Shown here: in pieces, positions 10,515 through 63,562 of the stretch
Numbering within the stretch: position 1 is the stretch's first letter
Layout: each line of letters begins with the position of its first letter
Position numbers and translations under genes: made by a program
The notes under the pieces: model-generated
Seen by the model: only the letters and a program-made list of their open reading frames with translations
The model's database searches: none
Told to the model about the DNA's origin: nothing
IMG/VR virus record: IMGVR_UViG_3300045970_000794
Coordinates: 248,001 to 312,000 of that record
Reading direction: 5' to 3' (one strand)
Length of the DNA: 64,000 bases

Positions 10515-11300
10515 TTATTTATTTAATAAATATAGTGATTCATCCATAACTGTTATAGAATTGATTGAATCATATGCTCTATTTTTTAAATCTGTTAGTC
10601 TTTCTAGGTATTCACCACGCCTTAATACTTTAAAAACAATGTTTTCAATTGAGTATTCACCAGAATGGGTTAATCCTTTTTTTCTCATATCTTTAATCTT
10701 ATCCCAAAGTGGTTGATAAGCTTTCATTACATCATCATACTTTTCAGCCTTAAATAAATCCTCAATCTCATCAATCTCATCAATAATATCAGCAGCTTTC
10801 TGTTTCACAACTTCTTTATCGTATTTAGGCTTTTGTTTCTTAGGTTTTTTAATCCATTCATTATCTTCTAATGAATAAACACCACTAGCAACATGTGGCT
10901 CTTTATAATCTTGAGCGTATAATTCAACATCATAATCATTAACCGTTAAGTCGTGAAGGTCGTTCCAAGAATCTTTCTTTAATTTAAGATATTCTTTAAC
11001 TAAGTCAACATCATCATTAACATCTTTATAATCAATAATGACATGTAAATCAACATCCGAGAATTTGGACCAATTATAATTAGCTAAACTACCTGTTAAT
11101 CTAACATCTTTGATTTCAACCCATGGAATATCTAATGATTCAAAAAAATCATCAGCAATTTTCAATAATTGTTTCCTAACTTCTGGTCTGATTTTATTTT
11201 CAGTAGCCCAAAGTTTTGGATTCAATTTAGGTTTAATTTCAAATGAGTCCAAATTAACGTCTTCTGGATTTAATTTCTCCAATATTAAATGTTCTTTCAT
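10515..11300 (-). CDS. Nucleotidyltransferase (Pol-beta superfamily)
   Basis: GSLANYNWSKFSDVDLHV (GS..DxD) plus DVELY third acidic residue. Confidence 0.8.
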   Translation of the reverse strand: MKEHLILEKLNPEDVNLDSFEIKPKLNPKLWATENKIRPEVRKQLLKIADDFFESLDIPWVEIKDVRLTGSLANYNWSKFSDVDLHVIIDYKDVNDDVDLVKEYLKLKKDSWNDLHDLTVNDYDVELYAQDYKEPHVASGVYSLEDNEWIKKPKKQKPKYDKEVVKQKAADIIDEIDEIEDLFKAEKYDDVMKAYQPLWDKIKDMRKKGLTHSGEYSIENIVFKVLRRGEYLERLTDLKNRAYDSINSITVMDESLYLLNK

Positions 11301-14084: not shown

Positions 14085-16607
14085 ATGGGTAACAGAGAAG
14101 TCGATTCTAAAGTTCAAGAAATTTTACAAAAAGCAATTGCAGAGGCTGACCAATATAATGACACTAAATTTAGGCCAGAGCATATCGTATTATCAATTAT
14201 TGATGATTCGAATAATGAATGTGTTAATATACTTAAAAATTTAGGTATTAATTTAGATAGTTTATATGATTTATTATTAAATTCTGTTAGTAATAATCAA
14301 ATAACACCACGTGTTGGACCTAAATATAATGGTAAAGCACCCCCAAGTGAATTAACTATTAAAGTATTAAATTTTGCTGATAAAGAAGCCGAATTAATGA
14401 ATGACACTAGTATTAATTTAAAACACATCATGTTAGGTATTTTAGATACTGATACACCAGTTACTAGACTCCTTAATGATTTGGATATAACAAGAACATC
14501 GTTTTACGAACAAATTAAAACACAAAATATGAGAGAAGATTATGATTTTGAGGATGATAACAATTCAAAAAAGAACATCCCACCAAGTAATAGGGTGAAA
14601 AAGAATTCTAAAACCCCAGTACTGGACAATTTCTGTAGGGATGTAACCAAAGCTGCTGAGGAAAAAACATTAGACCCAATTGTTGGTCGTGAAAAAGAAA
14701 TCCGTAGGGTTTCTCAAATTCTTTCTCGTAGAAAGAAAAACAATCCAGTTCTTATCGGTGAACCTGGTGTTGGTAAAACTGCATTAGTTGAAGGATTAGC
14801 ACAATTAATCGTTGATGGTAAAGCACCTAGAATTTTATTAGATAAACGAGTTTGTACATTAGATTTATCAGCATTGGTTGCTGGTACAAAATATCGTGGT
14901 CAATTCGAAGAAAGAATGAAAGCTTTATTAAACGAATTGGAGACTAATCCAGATGTAATTATTTTTATTGATGAATTACACACTATTATTGGTGCTGGTA
15001 ATGCTTCTGGTTCGCTGGATGCTTCCAACATTTTTAAACCAGCTTTAGCCAGAGGTGAAATACAAATCATTGGTGCTACTACATTAGATGAATATCGTGA
15101 GAATATTGAAAAAGATGGTGCACTTACTCGTAGATTTCAACAAGTATTAATTGAAGAGCCTACTTTATTGGAAACCAAAACTATTCTTATGAATGTTAAA
15201 TGTAAGTACGAAGACCATCATAAAGTAATTTATACTGAAGAAGCTATTGATGAATGCGTTAAATTGGCTGAAAGATATATTACCGACCGTGCTATGCCAG
15301 ATAAAGCTTTGGATGTTATGGACGAAGCTGGTGCATCTACCAATGTTACTGTTGAAATCCCAGAAATCATTAAAGAATTGGATGAAAAGAAAAAAGCCAT
15401 TCAACAAAAGAAAATGGAAGTTGTTAGAGCTCAGAAATATGAAGAAGCTGCTAAATTAAGGGATGATGAAGGAAAATTGGATGTTGAAATAAAGGCTGCT
15501 AAAGATGCTTGGATTAAACGATTGGATAATAAGAAAACAATTGTTGATGGTGATTTAGTTGCTGAGACAATTTCAATGATGACTGGAATTCCATTAAATA
15601 AAATTTCCAATAAAGAAAATAAAAGGTTACTTCAAATGGAAAGTGAACTCACTAATAAAATCATTGGTCAGAATGAAGCTGTGAGTAAAATTTCTAAAGC
15701 AATTAAACGTAATCGACTTGGAATTAAAGATAAAAATAAGCCAATTGGTTCATTTATATTTCTTGGGCCTACTGGTGTTGGTAAAACATTTTTAGCTAAA
15801 ATGTTAGCCGAATACGTATTTGGTGATACAGATGCATTGGTTCGTATCGATATGAGTGAGTATATGGAAAAACATTCCGTATCTAGATTAATCGGTGCTC
15901 CTCCAGGTTACGTTGGTTATGAACAAGGTGGTCAATTAACTGAGAAAGTTAGAAGAAAACCATACTGTGTAATACTTTTCGATGAAATTGAAAAAGCTCA
16001 TGATGATGTTTTTAATATCATGCTTCAATTATTAGATGAAGGTCAATTAACTGATAGTTTAGGTCGTAAAGTTAATTTTAAAAATACATTAATCATTATG
16101 ACTTCTAATATTGGGGTCAAAGATGCCAATGAATTCGGTGCTGGTATTGGATTTGATACTAAAGCTGGTGGTATTGTTGATGATGATAGAATGCGTTCAA
16201 TCGTTGAAAAAGCGTTGAAAAAGAAATTCAAACCAGAATTCCTTAATCGTTTAGATGATATCGTTACCTTCAATACATTAACCCGTGAAGACATTAGTAA
16301 AATCATTGTAAATGAATTAGGTCGTTTAACTCTTCGTATTAATGAAATCGGTCATGATGTAAAATACAGTAAAGAAGCTGTTGAACATTTAGCTACGATT
16401 GGTTACGATGTTAATTATGGTGCTAGACCATTAGCTAGAGCCATTCAGAAATATGTTGAAGACCCAGTATGTGAGGAAATTCTATCAGATAACATTAAAA
16501 AAGGTGACCAAATCAAAGTTACTTTTGATAAAAAAACTGAAACTCTATTGATTAAAGGTGTTAAAGCTAAATCGGCTGATGTATCAGAACCAGAATCTGT
16601 TGAGTAA
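14085..16607 (+). CDS. clpC: ATP-dependent Clp protease ATP-binding subunit
   Basis: Clp-N repeats, GEPGVGKT and GPTGVGKT Walker A motifs, UVR-like [15 protein letters not shown]. Confidence 0.93.
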
Positions 16608-32065: not shown

Positions 32066-33595
32066 ATGAGTAACACAATGTTAACAGTTAAAAAACCAGG
32101 TGGTATTACAACCCGTGGTAAAATCGTAATCGCAACTTTATTTGTTGGATTACTTGCAATCCTTTATTTCTCGTTCAGAGATAAAATTACTAAATTCGCT
32201 GGTGGTGCAACTAGTGGTGATGTGATTAAAATTGGCGTTGTTACATGGCCAGGTTATATCGGCGGTGAATACATGAACAACGGTTTTGCACCAAATATGG
32301 AATGCCGTTTCTATAAAGAATATGGTATTCAAGTTGAATTTAAAGTTCTTAACGATTTCTTAGCATCTAGAAAAGCTTTCGAATCTGGTGAAGTTGACCT
32401 TTTATGGTGTACTGCCGATGCTTTCCCAACTGAAATGGGTAGAGAAGGTACAATGGCTTTAAGTAATCCTAAATTCCTTTTCCAATCTGACTGGAGCCGT
32501 GGTGGTGATGCGATTGTTGTTGATATGTCTATCGATAAAATTTCTGACCTTAAAGGTAAAACTGTAGCTGTTGCTGAAGGAACTCCTAGTCACTCATTCC
32601 TTATTAACTTACTTAAAGCTAATAACATGACATTATCCGATATTGATGTGAAATCAGTACCAAGTGCTGTTGACGCTGCCGATGTTTTTAAACAAGGTGC
32701 ATGTGTAGCCTCAGTTGTATGGTCACCAGATGATATCGATTGTCTTAAAAAAGTTTCTGGTTCTAAAGTTTTAGCCTCTACTAAAGAAGCAACATATATT
32801 ATTGCCGATGGTTTTATTGCTAAAGACGAATATATTAAAAAGAACATTGAAAAATTACAAAAGCTTTACGATGGTTGGATGGTCGGTGCTGCTGAAATTA
32901 ATGCAAATAAAGATGGTGCTAGAAATAAAGCCGCAAAAATATTAGCCGATAATTTCCAAATGACTGAAAAAGATGCGTTAGCTTCACTTGATAACGTTAG
33001 ATTAGCCAATCACGGTGATAATAAAAATTTCTTCGGTCTTGGTGAATCAAATTGCGTAACTGGTGATATGTTATACACTACTATGTCTGGTGAATATCAA
33101 AAAATTAAAAAAGTTGAAAATCCTTTAATGTGGAGAGAAGTATCTGACGCAGTATTAGTTAAAGCATCAACCTTAACTGGTAACGGCCAATTAGCTGAAG
33201 TTAGTAAGAAATTTACCCCAGCTGGTTCAGATGTTAAAGAACGTAAAGCTTATTCTACTAAGAAAGTAACTATCAACTTCCCAAGTGGTTCTTATGCATT
33301 AACTGGTGAAGCTAAAGCTAAAATCAATAGAGAATACTCTGAAATTGCTAAAACCAATGGTGGTGCTAGAATTAGAGTAGAAGGAAATACTGATAACTCA
33401 GGTAATCCTAACTTTAACCAAACACTTTCTTATAATAGAGCTAAAGCTGTTGCAGAATATTTAACAAATCAATTTGGATTTGACTTCAATAGGTTCATTG
33501 TAATTGGAAATGGTTCTAAGCATGCAATAGATGCTGGTTCAAAAGGTGATGATGAAAATTATAGAACTACAGATTTCGGATTAATAAAAGAGTAA
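32066..33595 (+). CDS. ABC substrate-binding protein (SsuA/NMT1-like) fused to an OmpA-like C-terminal domain
   Basis: TWPGYIG, QSDWSRGGDAIV, DLKGKTVAV; IRVEGNTD..N..LS..RAKAV..YL. Confidence 0.85.
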   Translation: MSNTMLTVKKPGGITTRGKIVIATLFVGLLAILYFSFRDKITKFAGGATSGDVIKIGVVTWPGYIGGEYMNNGFAPNMECRFYKEYGIQVEFKVLNDFLASRKAFESGEVDLLWCTADAFPTEMGREGTMALSNPKFLFQSDWSRGGDAIVVDMSIDKISDLKGKTVAVAEGTPSHSFLINLLKANNMTLSDIDVKSVPSAVDAADVFKQGACVASVVWSPDDIDCLKKVSGSKVLASTKEATYIIADGFIAKDEYIKKNIEKLQKLYDGWMVGAAEINANKDGARNKAAKILADNFQMTEKDALASLDNVRLANHGDNKNFFGLGESNCVTGDMLYTTMSGEYQKIKKVENPLMWREVSDAVLVKASTLTGNGQLAEVSKKFTPAGSDVKERKAYSTKKVTINFPSGSYALTGEAKAKINREYSEIAKTNGGARIRVEGNTDNSGNPNFNQTLSYNRAKAVAEYLTNQFGFDFNRFIVIGNGSKHAIDAGSKGDDENYRTTDFGLIKE

Positions 33596-52601: not shown

Positions 52602-52714
52602 TTATAATGTGAAAATTATTAAATTTCCCTAGGGGACAAAACTCTTACATCCCTTGATAACCCATTATATACATTTTATCTATATCCTTCTGAAAGCCCA
52701 TATGAAAATAAATT

Positions 52715-52765
52715 GAAAATAATTCACTTTTTATTTGGTAGTTTAATTTATTTTTTGTACCTTTG
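52715..52765 (+). promoter_or_regulatory. Module P20 (class B)
   Basis: -7 box TACCTTTG 52758-52765. Confidence 0.8.
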
Positions 52766-52918
52766 TTCTGTCATTATAAGACATGTTGGTACCACCACAG
52801 TACCAAGAGGTATACTCCAACCTACACCATATTTTTTTTACCATATATTTAGATATATACATAACCTACATACGTATCAATAACAAAAAGGGAATGAGTA
52901 TTACACCCACCCCCTTAA
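52766..52918 (+). ncRNA. Candidate small RNA, copy A
   Basis: TGTCATTA..AGAC.TG and AGGTATACTCCAAC shared with 54922-54976; TTGGTAC-N7-GTACCAA hairpin. Confidence 0.4.
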
Positions 52919-52940
52919 AGAAAATAATATTAACTAAAAA

Positions 52941-53921
52941 CTATCTTAATACATAATCATTTTGACCTGTAACTTCTAATGCAAAATTAAATGATTGCAT
53001 ATTAGTTCTATAATTAGTACCAACACTTAAACTTTCAAGTTGACCATTCTCACGTTTTGGGTGTGATTTAGCATGATTAGTCCAACTAGTTACCCCATTG
53101 TGTAATCCAAAAATTGTATTACCTTTTTGGTTCATTTCTTTTTTAATGTGGGAATATAATGTGTCCATTGCATTTAAAGTTTTACCACTATCAACACCAA
53201 CCTTAGCAGTCAATCTATCAACACCTAATAATTCTCTTACTAAACCATCAACTAAATTTTGTGTACAGGCTGTTGAGTGGAATTTATTATAAATCTCAAT
53301 TTGTTTCATACTTTCGTTTAATGCTAAACGAATTAAACTTGGTAACTCAACCATTTTACCCTCTAACGACGCACTATGTTTTAACTTCATTTCACCCCTT
53401 TTATAAAAACGAAAAAATTGATTTGAACAGCTCATTACCATATCTGAAATTCCTACACCTAATCCAGTGCTACCATCATTAGAATCAATAATGGTAATGT
53501 ACTTTTTAATGCTATCATTACCAACTTTTGAAAATCCATCAATAGCTAACTGAATAAACGTTTTACGCCCACCATTCAAACAACCAGCTTTGCTTACATT
53601 TAACTCACCAAAACCATTCATACCACGTAACACCAATTCAACAACATCATCATTTTGGCTCACATGATAACTAGCTTTGGTAGTGTTAATGATTTCCATA
53701 CTTTGAGTATTTAATAACCCAAAATATGTGGTGCGAATTGATTTCTGTTTTTTAGCTTTACCAAATAAGCCAACCATTGGAACTTTCTCAATACGAAAAT
53801 TTAAACCATTGTCAACCAAGATTTTTTTCACTTGATTTTTAAGTGCTCTTTCTTGCTTTTTAGCATTATTAGTTTTTTGTGCCATAGCTTCTTTTTCAAA
53901 ATTTACGATTTCTGTTTTCAT
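52941..53921 (-). CDS. DUF932-family protein
   Basis: AGCLNGGRKTFIQL, DSNDGS..G..MVMSCSNQF, KHSAS; ATG 53921. Confidence 0.75.
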   Translation of the reverse strand: MKTEIVNFEKEAMAQKTNNAKKQERALKNQVKKILVDNGLNFRIEKVPMVGLFGKAKKQKSIRTTYFGLLNTQSMEIINTTKASYHVSQNDDVVELVLRGMNGFGELNVSKAGCLNGGRKTFIQLAIDGFSKVGNDSIKKYITIIDSNDGSTGLGVGISDMVMSCSNQFFRFYKRGEMKLKHSASLEGKMVELPSLIRLALNESMKQIEIYNKFHSTACTQNLVDGLVRELLGVDRLTAKVGVDSGKTLNAMDTLYSHIKKEMNQKGNTIFGLHNGVTSWTNHAKSHPKRENGQLESLSVGTNYRTNMQSFNFALEVTGQNDYVLR

Positions 53922-53930
53922 GATATATAG

Positions 53931-54000
53931 TTTTAATTGATTAATATAATGCAAAGGTAAGTAAAATATTTTAATCTACCAAATATTATTTAATATATTT
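53931..54000 (-). promoter_or_regulatory. Module P21
   Basis: -7 box 53959-53952. Confidence 0.85.
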
Positions 54001-54013
54001 TCAAATTATTTTA

Positions 54014-54676
54014 CTAATGTTGTACGAAACACACGTTATTCTTAGTTATACAGTAAGTACACTCCAAACCACATTTAATGTTTTTACTACTTGTAACAGG
54101 GCAAATAAATGATTTATGATTTGCTTTTAACTCATTGCAATACTCAATACTACCAAAATTCAATTTACCATTGATGAAACTACTTATTAAATTGAAATTG
54201 CTATTAGTCTTAATAACACTAAAATCTAATAAACTTTCTACCTTGGTATATACATAAAATTTAATATGTGGAAATAAACCAATAATATCATTCCAAAAAT
54301 CAATATATGATTGACTGAAAAAGTCACCACTAGAATGAATCCTTACCACAGTCCTTTTTGTTTCACTTAATTGTGTTACAATTAATTCCTTTAATAAACT
54401 TGGATTGTTTAAAAACAATTCATGATTAACAGTACGATACAATTCAGTATCTACATATTGAACCTCAGCCTTTTTTGCATAGCAACTTGCTTTGCAGTCC
54501 ACACAATTTAAACAAGTTTTTACACTTGGTAAATCAAAGATAAGAATATTATGTAACTTGCTATTACCATTAACTAATCTATTCTTATTAATATAGATGT
54601 AATTAAATAGTAATTCACGAGTATTGGTTTGTTTGCTGTAATCTCTGAATGTCCTAGATAAATCAAAATTGTTCAT
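54014..54676 (-). CDS. GP88-like (phage Gene 88) Cys-cluster protein
   Basis: FDLPSVKTC..C..C..CYAKK, VRIHSSGDF, FYVYTK, C..C..C; ATG 54676. Confidence 0.6.
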   Translation of the reverse strand: MNNFDLSRTFRDYSKQTNTRELLFNYIYINKNRLVNGNSKLHNILIFDLPSVKTCLNCVDCKASCYAKKAEVQYVDTELYRTVNHELFLNNPSLLKELIVTQLSETKRTVVRIHSSGDFFSQSYIDFWNDIIGLFPHIKFYVYTKVESLLDFSVIKTNSNFNLISSFINGKLNFGSIEYCNELKANHKSFICPVTSSKNIKCGLECTYCITKNNVCFVQH

Positions 54677-54689
54677 AGTGTTTCGGTTT

Positions 54690-54759
54690 AAGTGATTAAT
54701 AACATATTGCAAAACTACAAAAAATATTTCATATAAACAAATATTATTTAATATATTTT
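54690..54759 (-). promoter_or_regulatory. Module P22
   Basis: -7 box TAGTTTTG 54717-54710. Confidence 0.75.
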
Positions 54760-54870
54760 TCATATACTATATAAGATATTAATTGTTGGCTCAAACCCTC
54801 TGAAACCCCTATGGCAACTCAAAAACATTCTTATTCCGTGAATAAGAATGATAGCAAATTAAAATATTTT

Positions 54871-54921
54871 GAAAATAATTCACTTTTTATTTGGTAGATT
54901 AAATTATTTTCACTACCTTTG
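54871..54921 (+). promoter_or_regulatory. Module P23 (class B)
   Basis: -7 box TACCTTTG 54914-54921. Confidence 0.8.
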
Positions 54922-55020
54922 TATTGTCATTAAGACGTGACGATACCCACAACGGTCTCGGAAGGTATACTCCAACATGCAATGTTGTCGGTGGAACACT
55001 CCAATATGCCCGCTATTTTC
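54922..55020 (+). ncRNA. Candidate small RNA, copy B (3' end uncertain)
   Basis: Shares motifs with copy A; CAACAT-GCA-ATGTTG hairpin. Confidence 0.4.
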
Positions 55021-55278
55021 CTATGGGGAAATATTTGGAATTGTAAATTATTATTTGTAAGTTTGCATATGATTTAAATGGGACTGCGGTCCCACTGAAT
55101 TTGCTCGCTCATTAAATAAATGGGTTAGCCTTGCCATTCCTATTACTGAATATATCAGCGATACGGATTCCTATACCCATTTTTTTGCGAATTTGGGCAT
55201 CGGCATAGCTATTTCCAAAAATTTCTGGCGAAAAATATTAACAAAAATTTTTGCACAAGTCCGATTCCTATTAGAATA

Positions 55279-55314
55279 TACTATGGAATCTACTGTGGAA
55301 TATACTATGGAATA
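55279..55314. repeat. 12-bp tandem repeat x3
   Basis: TACTATGGAATC TACTGTGGAATA TACTATGGAATA. Confidence 0.85.
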
Positions 55315-55425
55315 TATTGTAAATTCCCTATAGGTGTAGGTAATTTTCTTAGGGGCTATAAAGGTGATTTTATATCATTTTTATGGGGAGTTATAGCTAT
55401 GGGAAAAATAAAACGATGAAGCATA

Positions 55426-55439
55426 TACACAATTGTGTA
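55426..55439. promoter_or_regulatory. TACAC-N4-GTGTA palindrome 3
   Basis: TACACAATTGTGTA. Confidence 0.6.
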
Positions 55440-55626
55440 CTTATGCTGGCATAGAGGCTCTTAGGAATCTCCATTTTTTACCACATTTTCCCACAAAGCC
55501 CCATACTTACCCCCATATAGTAAGGGGAACGTGGTTTAGAATGTATAGGGGCATATCTTATTATATTAGGCTATATAAAGCTCTGTAATGGATTAAAAAG
55601 TATATGGTGGGGCAGAAGTATAAAGA

Positions 55627-55640
55627 TACACATTTGTGTA
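55627..55640. promoter_or_regulatory. TACAC-N4-GTGTA palindrome 4
   Basis: TACACATTTGTGTA. Confidence 0.6.
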
Positions 55641-55650
55641 TTAGAGGGGC

Positions 55651-55932
55651 TTAAAATGAGTTAGTATTATCTAGTTCATTTTGTATAAATTGTATGGCTT
55701 CCATGGGTGACAATTTATTAATATCTCTATATAGCAGTTCATGAGATTGTCTAAGGAGGTGTTTTTGTATAGTTGATTCATCGAATGATTTGGATATAGA
55801 TTTAATGGACTCCAAGTACCTTACCCAATTAGAGTTGTTATTATAGTAGCCTAAATTTTCAGAGAATGTTTTAGCTATTCTATCATACTCGATATATTTG
55901 AATAGATTATATTGTTTATCTTCAAGTGCCAT
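55651..55932 (-). CDS. Hypothetical protein
   Basis: 93 aa, bracketed by palindromes 4 and 5. Confidence 0.6.
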   Translation of the reverse strand: MALEDKQYNLFKYIEYDRIAKTFSENLGYYNNNSNWVRYLESIKSISKSFDESTIQKHLLRQSHELLYRDINKLSPMEAIQFIQNELDNTNSF

Positions 55933-62644: not shown

Positions 62645-63562
62645 TTAAATTTTATTATTTCTTACTGAATCTTTTATTTCGATATAAATGGTTGATGCCA
62701 TTGGATATTTCTTCGTGACATCAAGTTTGATTTGCTCAATAGTATCTTCAATATCATAAGCTACTTCATCATCTTCAATATCCAATGATAATAATAACAT
62801 GAACTGGTTTTTACCTATGAACATTGTTTGAATCTTATTGATATGTTTTACCATATGATATTGCCCGATAATATGTTTAATATCATTTCTTATTTCCCTC
62901 GGGGCACTCTCACCAATAATTAACTTTCTGAGCTCATTAGAGAGCGTATAAGCGATTATCATCAGAATTAGACCTACAACTATGGAACCGATTGCATCGA
63001 ACACTGGAGAGACTGTAACAGCTAAAATTGTGGTGATGGCTACAACGATTAATCCGAATAATGCAACCATATCTTCTAGGATAATAACCAATAGGTTTGT
63101 ATCACTAGTATCAATGATTTTACGGAAGAATGAATCCTTACTGATTGTTTTGAATTGATTATAAGCAACTCTGAATGAGTTGAACTCTAAAATGATACCA
63201 ATACCAAGAACGATGAAGGACCAATAAACATGATGTATTGGTTCTGGCTTTGATAGTTTTTCAATTCCCTCATAAAGCGAATAGAATCCACCAACAAAGA
63301 ATAATAGTATTGCTACCATGAATCCCCAGAAATATTCTTCCTTACCATAACCGAATGAATGTAGTTCGGTTGGAGCTTTAGATGTTCTTTTATTACCAAT
63401 CAACAAGAACACTTGATTGCAACAATCAGCTGTTGAGTGAATGGCTTCGGCCAACATAGCAGTACTAGTAGTAACGACAGCTACAACGAATTTTATGGCT
63501 GCGATGATTGCATTACCAATAAGTGCGACCATAACGGCCTTCATTGAATTAGGTTTAGACAT
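62645..63562 (-). CDS. Cation diffusion facilitator (CDF) transporter
   Basis: SxAMLAEAIHSTAD, H.FGYGKEEYFW, EDMVAL, C-terminal dimerisation domain. Confidence 0.9.
   Translation of the reverse strand: MSKPNSMKAVMVALIGNAIIAAIKFVVAVVTTSTAMLAEAIHSTADCCNQVFLLIGNKRTSKAPTELHSFGYGKEEYFWGFMVAILLFFVGGFYSLYEGIEKLSKPEPIHHVYWSFIVLGIGIILEFNSFRVAYNQFKTISKDSFFRKIIDTSDTNLLVIILEDMVALFGLIVVAITTILAVTVSPVFDAIGSIVVGLILMIIAYTLSNELRKLIIGESAPREIRNDIKHIIGQYHMVKHINKIQTMFIGKNQFMLLLSLDIEDDEVAYDIEDTIEQIKLDVTKKYPMASTIYIEIKDSVRNNKI

What the first reader, a model, noticed from the sequence alone, without database searches (positions are those of the whole stretch)
52689..54990. Twin plus-strand non-coding transcription units with shared nucleotide motifs
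Seen: P20 and P23 are near-identical class B promoters, each preceded by TCTGAAA(G/C)CCC.TATG and followed by TGTCATTA(TA)AGAC(A/G)TG and, about 25 nt later, AGGTATACTCCAAC. The shared 14-mer falls in different frames of the short chance ORFs, so conservation is at RNA/DNA level. Both point against the surrounding genes. Inference: a duplicated sRNA family, or primer RNAs for the adjacent origin-like region.
Basis: partly seen in the sequence, partly recalled or inferred. Interest (0 to 1): 0.65.

Follow-up and report, generated by a model that had tools for sequence, protein, structure and literature searches.

The report
New phage small-RNA gene family
The two look-alike non-coding units are real genes for a structured RNA of about 70 nt, each with its own promoter; the family is not in Rfam, has about 100 distinct copies in related uncultured Bacteroidota-type jumbo phages, and its binding partner is still unknown.

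Summary
Two plus-strand units (about 52689-52843 and 54799-55019) share an identical 29-bp promoter block, a hairpin and the 14-mer AGGTATACTCCAAC, and sit among minus-strand genes. The window is part of a complete 362-kb T4-like phage genome with Bacteroidota-type promoters (TTTG at -33, TAnnTTTG at -7).

The units are two members of a large RNA family that Rfam 15 does not hold. A covariance model found 129 copies (102 distinct) in 66 phage and metagenome loci. There are up to seven copies per 64-kb fragment, sometimes in tandem, on either strand.

Both hairpins covary: all 11 pairs show double changes, and 85% of cells are paired against 31-50% in slid controls. G-U outnumbers A-C two to one, so the structure belongs to the RNA of the promoter strand. 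A -7 box lies just upstream in 77 of 100 units, and 59 of 100 end in a T-run. No reading frame is conserved. The core GUAUACUCC is nearly invariant.

No copy, mimic or 13-nt complement of the core turned up in the Bacteroidota genomes sampled.

Best reading: stand-alone, probably early, trans-acting small RNAs whose conserved core binds a conserved partner, probably a protein. The primer-RNA idea is not supported. Expression could not be checked.

The parts
52689..52704 (+). Upstream motif of unit A (TCTGAAAGCCCATATG), shared with unit B apart from a one-base indel. Role unknown.
52705..52765 (+). Promoter of unit A: an A/T-rich upstream block including the 29-mer at 52713-52741, TTTG (-33) at 52734-52737 and TACCTTTG (-7) at 52758-52765.
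   Evidence: The same promoter type stands in front of 4 protein genes elsewhere in the genome.
52767..52843 (+). Small RNA gene A. P1 is 52769-52783 and P2 is 52786-52806. The conserved core is 52807-52825, and its invariant part GTATACTCC is 52810-52818. The tail and T8 run end at 52839.
   Evidence: Model R1 scores it 72.9 bits, E 2.5e-15. Fold. Covariation.
52888..52916 (-). Terminator-like hairpin plus T-run of the convergent DUF932 gene, between RNA A and that gene.
52941..53954 (-). DUF932-family gene. The likely start is the ATG at 53921. It is convergent with RNA A.
   Evidence: Pfam PF06067, E 1.4e-18. A homologue lies beside 30 of 60 units.
54014..54763 (-). GP88-family gene. Its promoter lies back to back with unit B.
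   Evidence: Pfam PF17338, E 6.4e-22. A homologue lies near 22 of 60 units.
54799..54813 (+). Upstream motif of unit B (TCTGAAACCCCTATG).
54826..54850 (-). Minus-strand terminator-like hairpin, inserted between the upstream motif and the promoter of unit B.
54861..54921 (+). Promoter of unit B: the 29-mer at 54869-54897, TTTG at 54890-54893 and TACCTTTG at 54914-54921.
54920..55019 (+). Small RNA gene B. P1 is 54925-54937, P2 is 54941-54960 and the core is 54961-54976. A degenerate second copy of the core follows at 54993-55009. The tail is a weak GCTATTTT at 55012-55019, with no long T-run.
   Evidence: Model R1 scores it 60.3 bits, E 4e-12. Internal duplication D6.

Best explanation
Each unit is a stand-alone gene for a structured small RNA of about 65-75 nt.

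How it is made. Host RNA polymerase starts a few bases after a Bacteroidota-type promoter (TTTG at -33, TAnnTTTG at -7, with an A/T-rich upstream block). In most family members it stops at a T-run.

What the RNA looks like. It has two scaffold hairpins whose sequences drift freely while pairing is kept. P1 has 4-6 bp. P2 has 5-8 bp, is closed by C-G, and has an A-G apposition at its base. A conserved 3' element follows: GG-N-A-R, then GUAUACUCC, then R-A-C-C-U-A-Y. This element may be displayed as the loop of a weak A/U terminator stem.

How it most likely works. The RNA acts in trans. The conserved element is the working part and binds a partner that is conserved across the hosts or phages concerned. 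That partner is more likely a protein than a long complementary RNA. The RNA would then be a decoy or sponge, or the RNA subunit of a small ribonucleoprotein. Several divergent copies per genome would raise the dose while avoiding recombination between copies.

Shown: promoter, structure, strand, non-coding nature, family size and phage-only distribution. Inferred: transcription itself, trans action, and the nature of the partner.

My odds: about 0.85 that these are genes for a structured RNA; about 0.35-0.4 that the partner is a protein.
For: - Family size: the exact core is found behind a -7 box in 7 other viral contigs and 59 metagenome loci. Model R1 finds 129 copies, 102 distinct.
- Covariation: P1 has 4 of 4 pairs and P2 7 of 7 pairs with changes on both sides, 243 such cells against 74 in shuffles. 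85.5% of cells are paired against 31-50% when partners are slid, and 0 of 500 shuffles reach the observed value. RNAalifold recovers P2 on its own. Mutual information ranks the same pairs highest.
- Strand: G-U 118 against A-C 59 in the stems, so the fold belongs to the promoter strand.
- P2 is a scaffold: in two members (L157, L172) it is lengthened and capped by a CUUCGG loop.
- Transcription signals: TAnnTTTG ends within a few nt of the model start in 77 of 100 units (3% at random positions). A T5+ run follows the core in 59 of 100 (17% at random).
- Intergenic position, in either orientation relative to the neighbouring genes. This argues for a diffusible product.
- No conserved frame.
- No long RNA target: the core and its complement are no more frequent than a reversed control in 301 Bacteroidota genomes, and the phage genome has no complement beyond chance.
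- Not a known RNA: no Rfam hit even at E up to 10 in the region or up to 5 in eight related loci, and no tRNA or tmRNA.
Against: - No expression data.
- No partner was identified.
- About half of the family was collected with an exact 18-mer, so the invariance of the core is partly a result of how the copies were found. The copies found only by the model still keep GUAUACUCC.
- Neither fold proposed for the core (GGAG/CUCC, or GUAUA/UAUAU) shows covariation. The first is broken without compensation in 15-32 of 102 sequences.
- Unit B lacks the usual tail and T-run.
- Pairing with a host mRNA through a short seed of 7-9 nt cannot be excluded with these tools.
Confidence: 0.6

Rival explanations
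1. Antisense regulator. The conserved single-stranded element (CUCCAACCUAC within the core) pairs through a short seed with one or more host or phage mRNAs and changes their translation or stability.
For: The design fits many base-pairing small RNAs: variable scaffold hairpins, a conserved unpaired stretch and a terminator T-run.
Against: The phage genome holds no complement of the 11-16-nt core beyond chance: 5 one-mismatch 11-mers found, about 6 expected. The 13-nt complement is not enriched in 301 Bacteroidota genomes: 18 genomes with a match, about 24 control matches. As far as I know, Bacteroidota lack Hfq and ProQ. Near-invariance over 16-20 nt is more than a seed needs.
Confidence: 0.15
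2. RNA mimic used against host defence. The RNA imitates a CRISPR repeat (an RNA anti-CRISPR) or a type III antitoxin RNA, and so loads or blocks a host nuclease.
For: The units sit in a region of small early-type accessory genes (DUF932, GP88; SprT-like and DUF6011 in relatives). I recall these families from plasmid leading regions, which carry anti-defence genes. Part of unit A (GTTGG ... CCAAC, 37 nt) loosely recalls Cas13b repeats as I remember them. Multi-copy expansion is known for pseudo-ToxI (from memory).
Against: The exact 18-mer core is absent from 185,579 species genomes except for 4 chance hits, of which the three inspected (L120-L122) lie in what reads as coding sequence. No sampled Bacteroidota genome has 2 or more copies of the 13-mer, so no array carries it. 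Model R1 finds nothing real in 151 genomes. The GTTGG 5' end is not conserved in the family. The units are separate genes, not tandem short repeats in front of a toxin gene. The ORF of about 180 aa behind one subtype has no ToxN or AbiQ Pfam match.
Confidence: 0.08
3. DNA-level regulatory cassette. The repeated promoter, stem-loop and terminator modules mainly insulate transcription or promote recombination between gene cassettes in a plastic genome region, like the PeSL elements of T4-type phages. The RNA would be a by-product.
For: The phage is T4-like (portal gp20, T4-type terminase). The units flank a conserved two-gene cassette as direct repeats about 2.2 kb apart in at least five contigs. 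The promoter and P1 of A and B are nearly identical while P2 differs, which suggests exchange between copies.
Against: Compensatory changes keep the pairing while the sequence drifts, and G-U exceeds A-C two to one. This is selection on a folded RNA of one strand, not on duplex DNA. An insulator or recombination site does not need a nearly invariant core. The units point against the genes they would have to serve.
Confidence: 0.08
4. Primer or R-loop RNA of a replication origin, as at T4 oriF, oriG or oriE, serving the iteron-like region next to unit B.
For: Unit B lacks a strong terminator. It runs towards 55000-55650, which holds a further plus-strand promoter, four tandem 12-nt units (55274-55320) and palindromes. 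T4-type phages do use promoter-primed origins (from memory).
Against: The same RNA occurs many times per genome, in tandem and on both strands, mostly with its own T-run. Unit A ends at a T8 run that faces a convergent gene. Structural covariation of two hairpins is not expected for an R-loop primer.
Confidence: 0.05
5. The units encode small peptides.
For: Chance ORFs of 40-57 aa overlap both units.
Against: 42 of 99 family members have no ORF of 20 aa or more through the core. The rest are spread over all three frames. The distance from the model start to the core is spread over all three residues modulo 3. The substitutions are pair-compensating.
Confidence: 0.02

Closest known systems
Phage-encoded trans-acting small RNAs in general (for example the T4 band C and D RNAs of unknown function, or prophage sRNAs such as DicF and IpeX; recalled from memory)
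   Same: Short, non-coding, own promoter and terminator, carried by a phage genome, and likely made by the host polymerase.
   Different: No sequence or model similarity to any Rfam family. Here the RNA is a multi-copy family with a nearly invariant core of 9-20 nt on a freely varying two-hairpin scaffold, in phages with Bacteroidota-type promoters.
PeSL (promoter-early stem-loop) repeats of T4-type phages (from memory: Arbiol et al. 2010)
   Same: Repeated intergenic modules with an early-type promoter and a stem-loop. They flank small accessory genes in a plastic region of a T4-like genome.
   Different: As I recall them, PeSLs are co-oriented regulatory DNA repeats. Here the order is promoter, structured RNA, terminator; the unit usually points against its neighbours; both stems covary; and there is a conserved unpaired core.
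RNA anti-CRISPRs (solitary repeat units) and pseudo-ToxI antitoxin mimics
   Same: Small phage RNAs with their own promoter that could work as decoys, sometimes amplified in copy number.
   Different: No host repeat or antitoxin resembling the core was found in the genomes searched. There is no toxin gene and no array context.
put RNAs of phage HK022 and lambda nut sites (twin elements just downstream of two promoters)
   Same: Two copies per genome in this phage, each about 70 nt with two hairpins, directly after near-identical promoters.
   Different: Those elements act in cis on downstream co-oriented operons. Here there are no co-oriented genes downstream, most units end in their own T-run, and relatives carry many copies.

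Membership tests
Any Rfam 15 family | Covariance-model score at or near the family's gathering threshold | tested here: not met
   There were 0 matches at gathering score in the 64-kb window. At E up to 10 in 52700-55700 there were only two unrelated weak hits elsewhere. At E up to 5 in eight related loci no hit fell on any unit.
tRNA / tmRNA | Cloverleaf or tmRNA architecture detectable by ARAGORN | tested here: not met
   There were 0 genes in the window. The genome's 40 tRNA genes all lie at 24-77 kb.
RNA anti-CRISPR (solitary repeat unit) | Sequence and hairpin closely match a CRISPR repeat present in arrays of the host lineage | tested here: not met
   The 18-mer core gave only 4 chance hits in 185,579 species genomes. 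The 13-mer never occurs twice in any of 301 Bacteroidota genomes. Model R1 found nothing in 151 genomes. The true host is unknown, so this is not absolute.
Type III antitoxin RNA (ToxI-like) or phage pseudo-ToxI | Tandem short repeats (about 36-45 nt) directly upstream of a ToxN, AbiQ, CptN or TenpN endoribonuclease gene | tested here: not met
   The units are about 70-nt genes with their own promoters, at least 140 nt apart. The neighbours are DUF932, GP88, SprT-like and DUF6011 genes. The co-oriented ORF of about 180 aa has no Pfam match.
Processive antiterminator RNA (put-like) | Lies in the leader of a co-oriented operon and lets polymerase read through downstream terminators | tested here: not met
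   In this window all the ORFs that flank the two units, about 1 kb upstream and 1-2 kb downstream, are on the opposite strand. About 45 of 60 units elsewhere are antisense to both neighbours. 59 of 100 end in a T5+ run.
Origin primer RNA (T4 oriF/oriG/oriE type) | One promoter-primed transcript per origin that forms a persistent RNA-DNA hybrid at an unwinding element or iterons | tested here: inconclusive
   Copy number, tandem arrangement, both strands and own terminators speak against it for the family. Unit B does face iteron-like repeats. R-loop formation is not testable with these tools.
PeSL-type mobile regulatory cassette | Repeated early promoter plus stem-loop DNA that flanks accessory ORFs, conserved as sequence rather than as RNA fold | tested here: inconclusive
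   The flanking arrangement is met. Conservation is of the fold, with compensatory changes and a G-U bias, which goes beyond the definition.

The most novel reading that the evidence does not exclude
These RNAs are a new class of phage effector: an abundant early RNA whose invariant GUAUACUCC-containing element captures a conserved Bacteroidota protein. That protein could be a defence nuclease, an RNA-decay or translation factor, or RNA polymerase. Alternatively, the RNA forms a ribonucleoprotein with the DUF932 and GP88 proteins that it flanks. Jumbo phages would then use a multi-copy RNA decoy to take over or disarm the host.
Probability: 0.2. Interest if true: 0.85.

Novelty: new variant of a known kind. 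Interest (0 to 1): 0.62.

Why it matters
Small RNAs of phages that infect Bacteroidota are, to my knowledge, essentially uncharted, and jumbo phages known only from metagenomes have no genetics.

This family is well defined: about 100 distinct members, clear covariation, its own promoters, and a nearly invariant core. It therefore gives a concrete, easily synthesised handle. A 70-nt RNA can be used as bait to fish out its partner from Flavobacterium or Cytophaga-type hosts.

If the partner is a defence or core-machinery protein, the family would be a new example of RNA-based host takeover. It would also be a useful marker for this phage clade in lake metagenomes.

If it turns out to be an ordinary regulator, it is still a new family for Rfam.

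Tried and rejected
- Rfam at gathering score and at loose E-values, and ARAGORN: nothing.
- Thermodynamic folding of single units: not better than shuffles, z between -1.5 and +0.2. The evidence for structure comes from covariation, not from energy.
- P3 (GGAG/CUCC) and P4 (GUAUA/UAUAU, a possible terminator stem): no covariation, and P3 is broken without compensation. Both are left open.
- A pseudoknot between the A-rich P2 loop and the 3' U-run: rejected by eye. Loops without A-runs still carry U-runs, and some P2 loops are replaced by CUUCGG caps.
- A target in the phage genome: only chance-level complements.
- A host target, a mimic or a CRISPR array: not found in the genomes searched.
- Megablast of the region against the phage collection, and tblastn of the DUF932 protein: no match. 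The nearest isolates by portal protein are only 36-38% identical, and Flavobacterium phage immuto has no copy.
- DUF932 as a possible RNA-binding partner: the model is good (pLDDT 85.6), but Foldseek against the PDB, the wide VIA search and a profile search of PDB sequences gave only noise. The GP88 profile also had no solved relative.
- Type III toxin idea: the ORF of about 180 aa behind one RNA subtype has no Pfam family.
- Literature: the core sequence, DUF932 plus phage, and structured-RNA surveys of viruses gave nothing that describes this RNA.
I did not try to reach reads another way.
Full report
**What is there.**
The window is bases 248001-312000 of a complete 362,102-bp virus record with direct terminal repeats. 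It is about 30% G+C. It encodes a T4-type portal and terminase and about 40 tRNAs elsewhere in the genome.

Around the finding every ORF of 60 aa or more is on the minus strand. On the plus strand two units share:
- an identical 29-bp block at 52713-52741 and 54869-54897 (none in 100 shuffles);
- TTTG, then 20 bp later TACCTTTG. From my own knowledge, this is the -33/-7 promoter pattern of Bacteroidota;
- a short hairpin;
- the 14-mer AGGTATACTCCAAC at 52808-52821 and 54963-54976.

These are the only two copies in the genome. The same promoter type occurs four more times in the genome, in front of protein genes. It is therefore a working promoter class and not part of the repeat as such.

**It is a family.**
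Scanning IMG/VR for the 14-mer gave mostly chance hits. It also gave several contigs in which the 14-mer lies 45-60 nt behind a TAnCTTTG box and is followed by CTAC and a T-run.

The 18-mer AGGTATACTCCAACCTAC gave 59 metagenome loci, nearly all of this kind. In 185,579 species genomes it gave only four chance hits; the three I looked at (L120-L122) read as coding sequence.

A covariance model was built from 16 units. It found 129 copies, 102 distinct, in 66 loci. Many were divergent copies that the 18-mer had missed. Some contigs hold six copies, some copies are in tandem about 145 nt apart, and copies lie on either strand. Two related viral fragments of 64 and 122 kb, estimated at 19% and 34% complete and hence also jumbo phages, carry 7 and 2 copies.

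**It is an RNA, and of the promoter strand.**
On the 102 distinct sequences:
- All 4 pairs of P1 and all 7 pairs of P2 show changes on both sides.
- 85.5% of cells are paired, against 31-50% when partners are slid by 1-3 columns. No shuffle out of 500 reaches the observed values.
- RNAalifold recovers P2 independently, and mutual information ranks the same pairs highest.
- In the stems G-U occurs 118 times and A-C 59 times. This places the fold on the strand read from the promoter.
- Two members lengthen P2 and cap it with CUUCGG, so the P2 loop is scaffold.
- At the base of P2 an A-G apposition is replaced by U-A or G-A in variants.

The 3' element is conserved as sequence: GG-N-A-R, GUAUACUCC, R-A-C-C-U-A-Y. 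The nine-base heart is unchanged in about 97-99 of 100 sequences. Half of the set was collected through this sequence, so its invariance is partly a result of the search. The copies found only by the model keep it too.

Neither fold I tried for this element covaries. The first was GGAG/CUCC. The second was GUAUA paired with the UAUAU before the T-run, which would make a weak terminator stem displaying CUCCAACCUAC as its loop.

**It is a gene with its own signals, and it is not coding.**
A TAnnTTTG box ends within a few bases of the model start in 77 of 100 units, against 3% at random positions. A run of five or more T follows the core in 59 of 100, against 17%.

The units lie in intergenic gaps. 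About three quarters point against both neighbours and the rest run with them. This fits a diffusible product better than a cis element.

42 of 99 units have no ORF of 20 aa or more through the core. The others use all three frames.

**Context.**
In this window the order is RNA A, then the DUF932 and GP88 genes on the opposite strand, then RNA B. The same order, with different RNA sequences, recurs in at least four other contigs (L064, L170, L178, L142) and in looser form in L134 and L153. There the DUF932 proteins are 45-60% identical to this one.

A DUF932 homologue stands beside 30 of 60 units. Because the phages are related, this may be inherited synteny rather than a functional link. The DUF932 model is confident but matches no solved fold. 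Other neighbours are SprT-like, DUF6011 and HNH-like genes and many unknowns. This is a typical accessory-gene region in which each gene has its own promoter.

**Unit B is atypical.**
After the core it carries a degenerate second copy of the core (54993-55009) and only a short T4 tail at 55016-55019. Another plus-strand promoter follows directly.

**Mechanism.**
The pattern is a freely drifting scaffold, an invariant unpaired element, several diverged copies and a strong promoter shared with early-type genes. It points to a trans-acting RNA whose conserved element binds something conserved.

A long complementary RNA is unlikely. The phage has no complement beyond chance. In 301 Bacteroidota genomes the 13-mer, on either strand, is no more frequent than its reversed control. 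The same result, with the 18-mer scan and a model search of 151 genomes, argues against mimicry of a host CRISPR repeat or antitoxin. The true host is unknown, so this is not final.

I therefore favour a protein partner, with the RNA as decoy, sponge or RNP subunit, at about 0.35-0.4. A short-seed antisense role comes next. The origin-primer idea fits neither the copy number, nor the tandem and two-strand arrangement, nor the terminators.

**Limits.**
The host is not identified. The alignment used for the statistics was fitted by the model, which leans towards its structure. The seed alignment made by MAFFT alone gave the same verdict for P2.

**Novelty.**
I found no Rfam family and no paper that describes this RNA. 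It may be hidden among the unnamed candidates of large viral surveys. It is a new family within the known kind of phage-encoded small RNA. Its copy number and its invariant core on a variable scaffold are unusual.

Noticed in passing
window 55028-55190 (+): A further Bacteroidota-type promoter (TTTGG ... TAAGTTTGCA, 55028-55068) follows directly after unit B. Behind it lies a stretch of about 115 nt with a GGGACTGCGGTCCC hairpin and a long stem that ends in T7. It folds better than shuffles (-30.5 kcal/mol, z -2.7), has no long ORF and has no Rfam match. It may be a second, unrelated small RNA.
   Followed up: partly
window 55274-55320: Four tandem 12-nt units (GGAATATACTAT / GGAATCTACTGT), iteron-like, in a 650-bp gene-free stretch with positive GC skew. 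It was not tested.
   Followed up: no
window 55425-55439 and 55626-55640; also L060, L128, L135, L143, L158, L174, L180: The palindrome ATACACAATTGTGTA occurs twice here. The same 17-18-mer recurs in several related contigs. It looks like a conserved operator for a dimeric DNA-binding protein.
   Followed up: no
genome C1 71732-71807 (outside the window): Among about 40 phage tRNA genes at 24-77 kb, ARAGORN calls one with anticodon CTA (an amber suppressor). This hints that TAG may be read through at some stage. No recoding was assumed in this work.
   Followed up: no
L188/L189 (LR756502.1, about 10880-11100, minus strand of the record): A 642-kb uncultured phage has one look-alike of the core (AAGTATACTCCAACCTGC, then TTATATA). 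It lies about 110 nt behind a promoter of the same type, but with a longer and different 5' domain. Model R1 does not score it. The core may therefore be shared by a wider superfamily.
   Followed up: partly
window 36857-equivalent sites: genome 36857(-), 290729(+), 297117(-), 310012(-): The promoter class of the two RNAs (AAAATAATTGCATTTTTATTTGGTAG, then a -7 box) also drives four protein genes. It probably marks one temporal class.
   Followed up: partly
L143 4154-4521, L158 9339-9706: Three family members stand head to tail about 145 nt apart, each with its own promoter-like box. This is a small-RNA gene array reminiscent of tRNA clusters.
   Followed up: partly
window 14085-16607 (+), 32066-33595 (+), 62645-63562 (-): The phage carries a ClpB-like double AAA+ chaperone, an OmpA-domain protein with an NMT1/THI5-like domain (substrate-binding type), and a cation-efflux family protein. 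These are unusual auxiliary genes.
   Followed up: no
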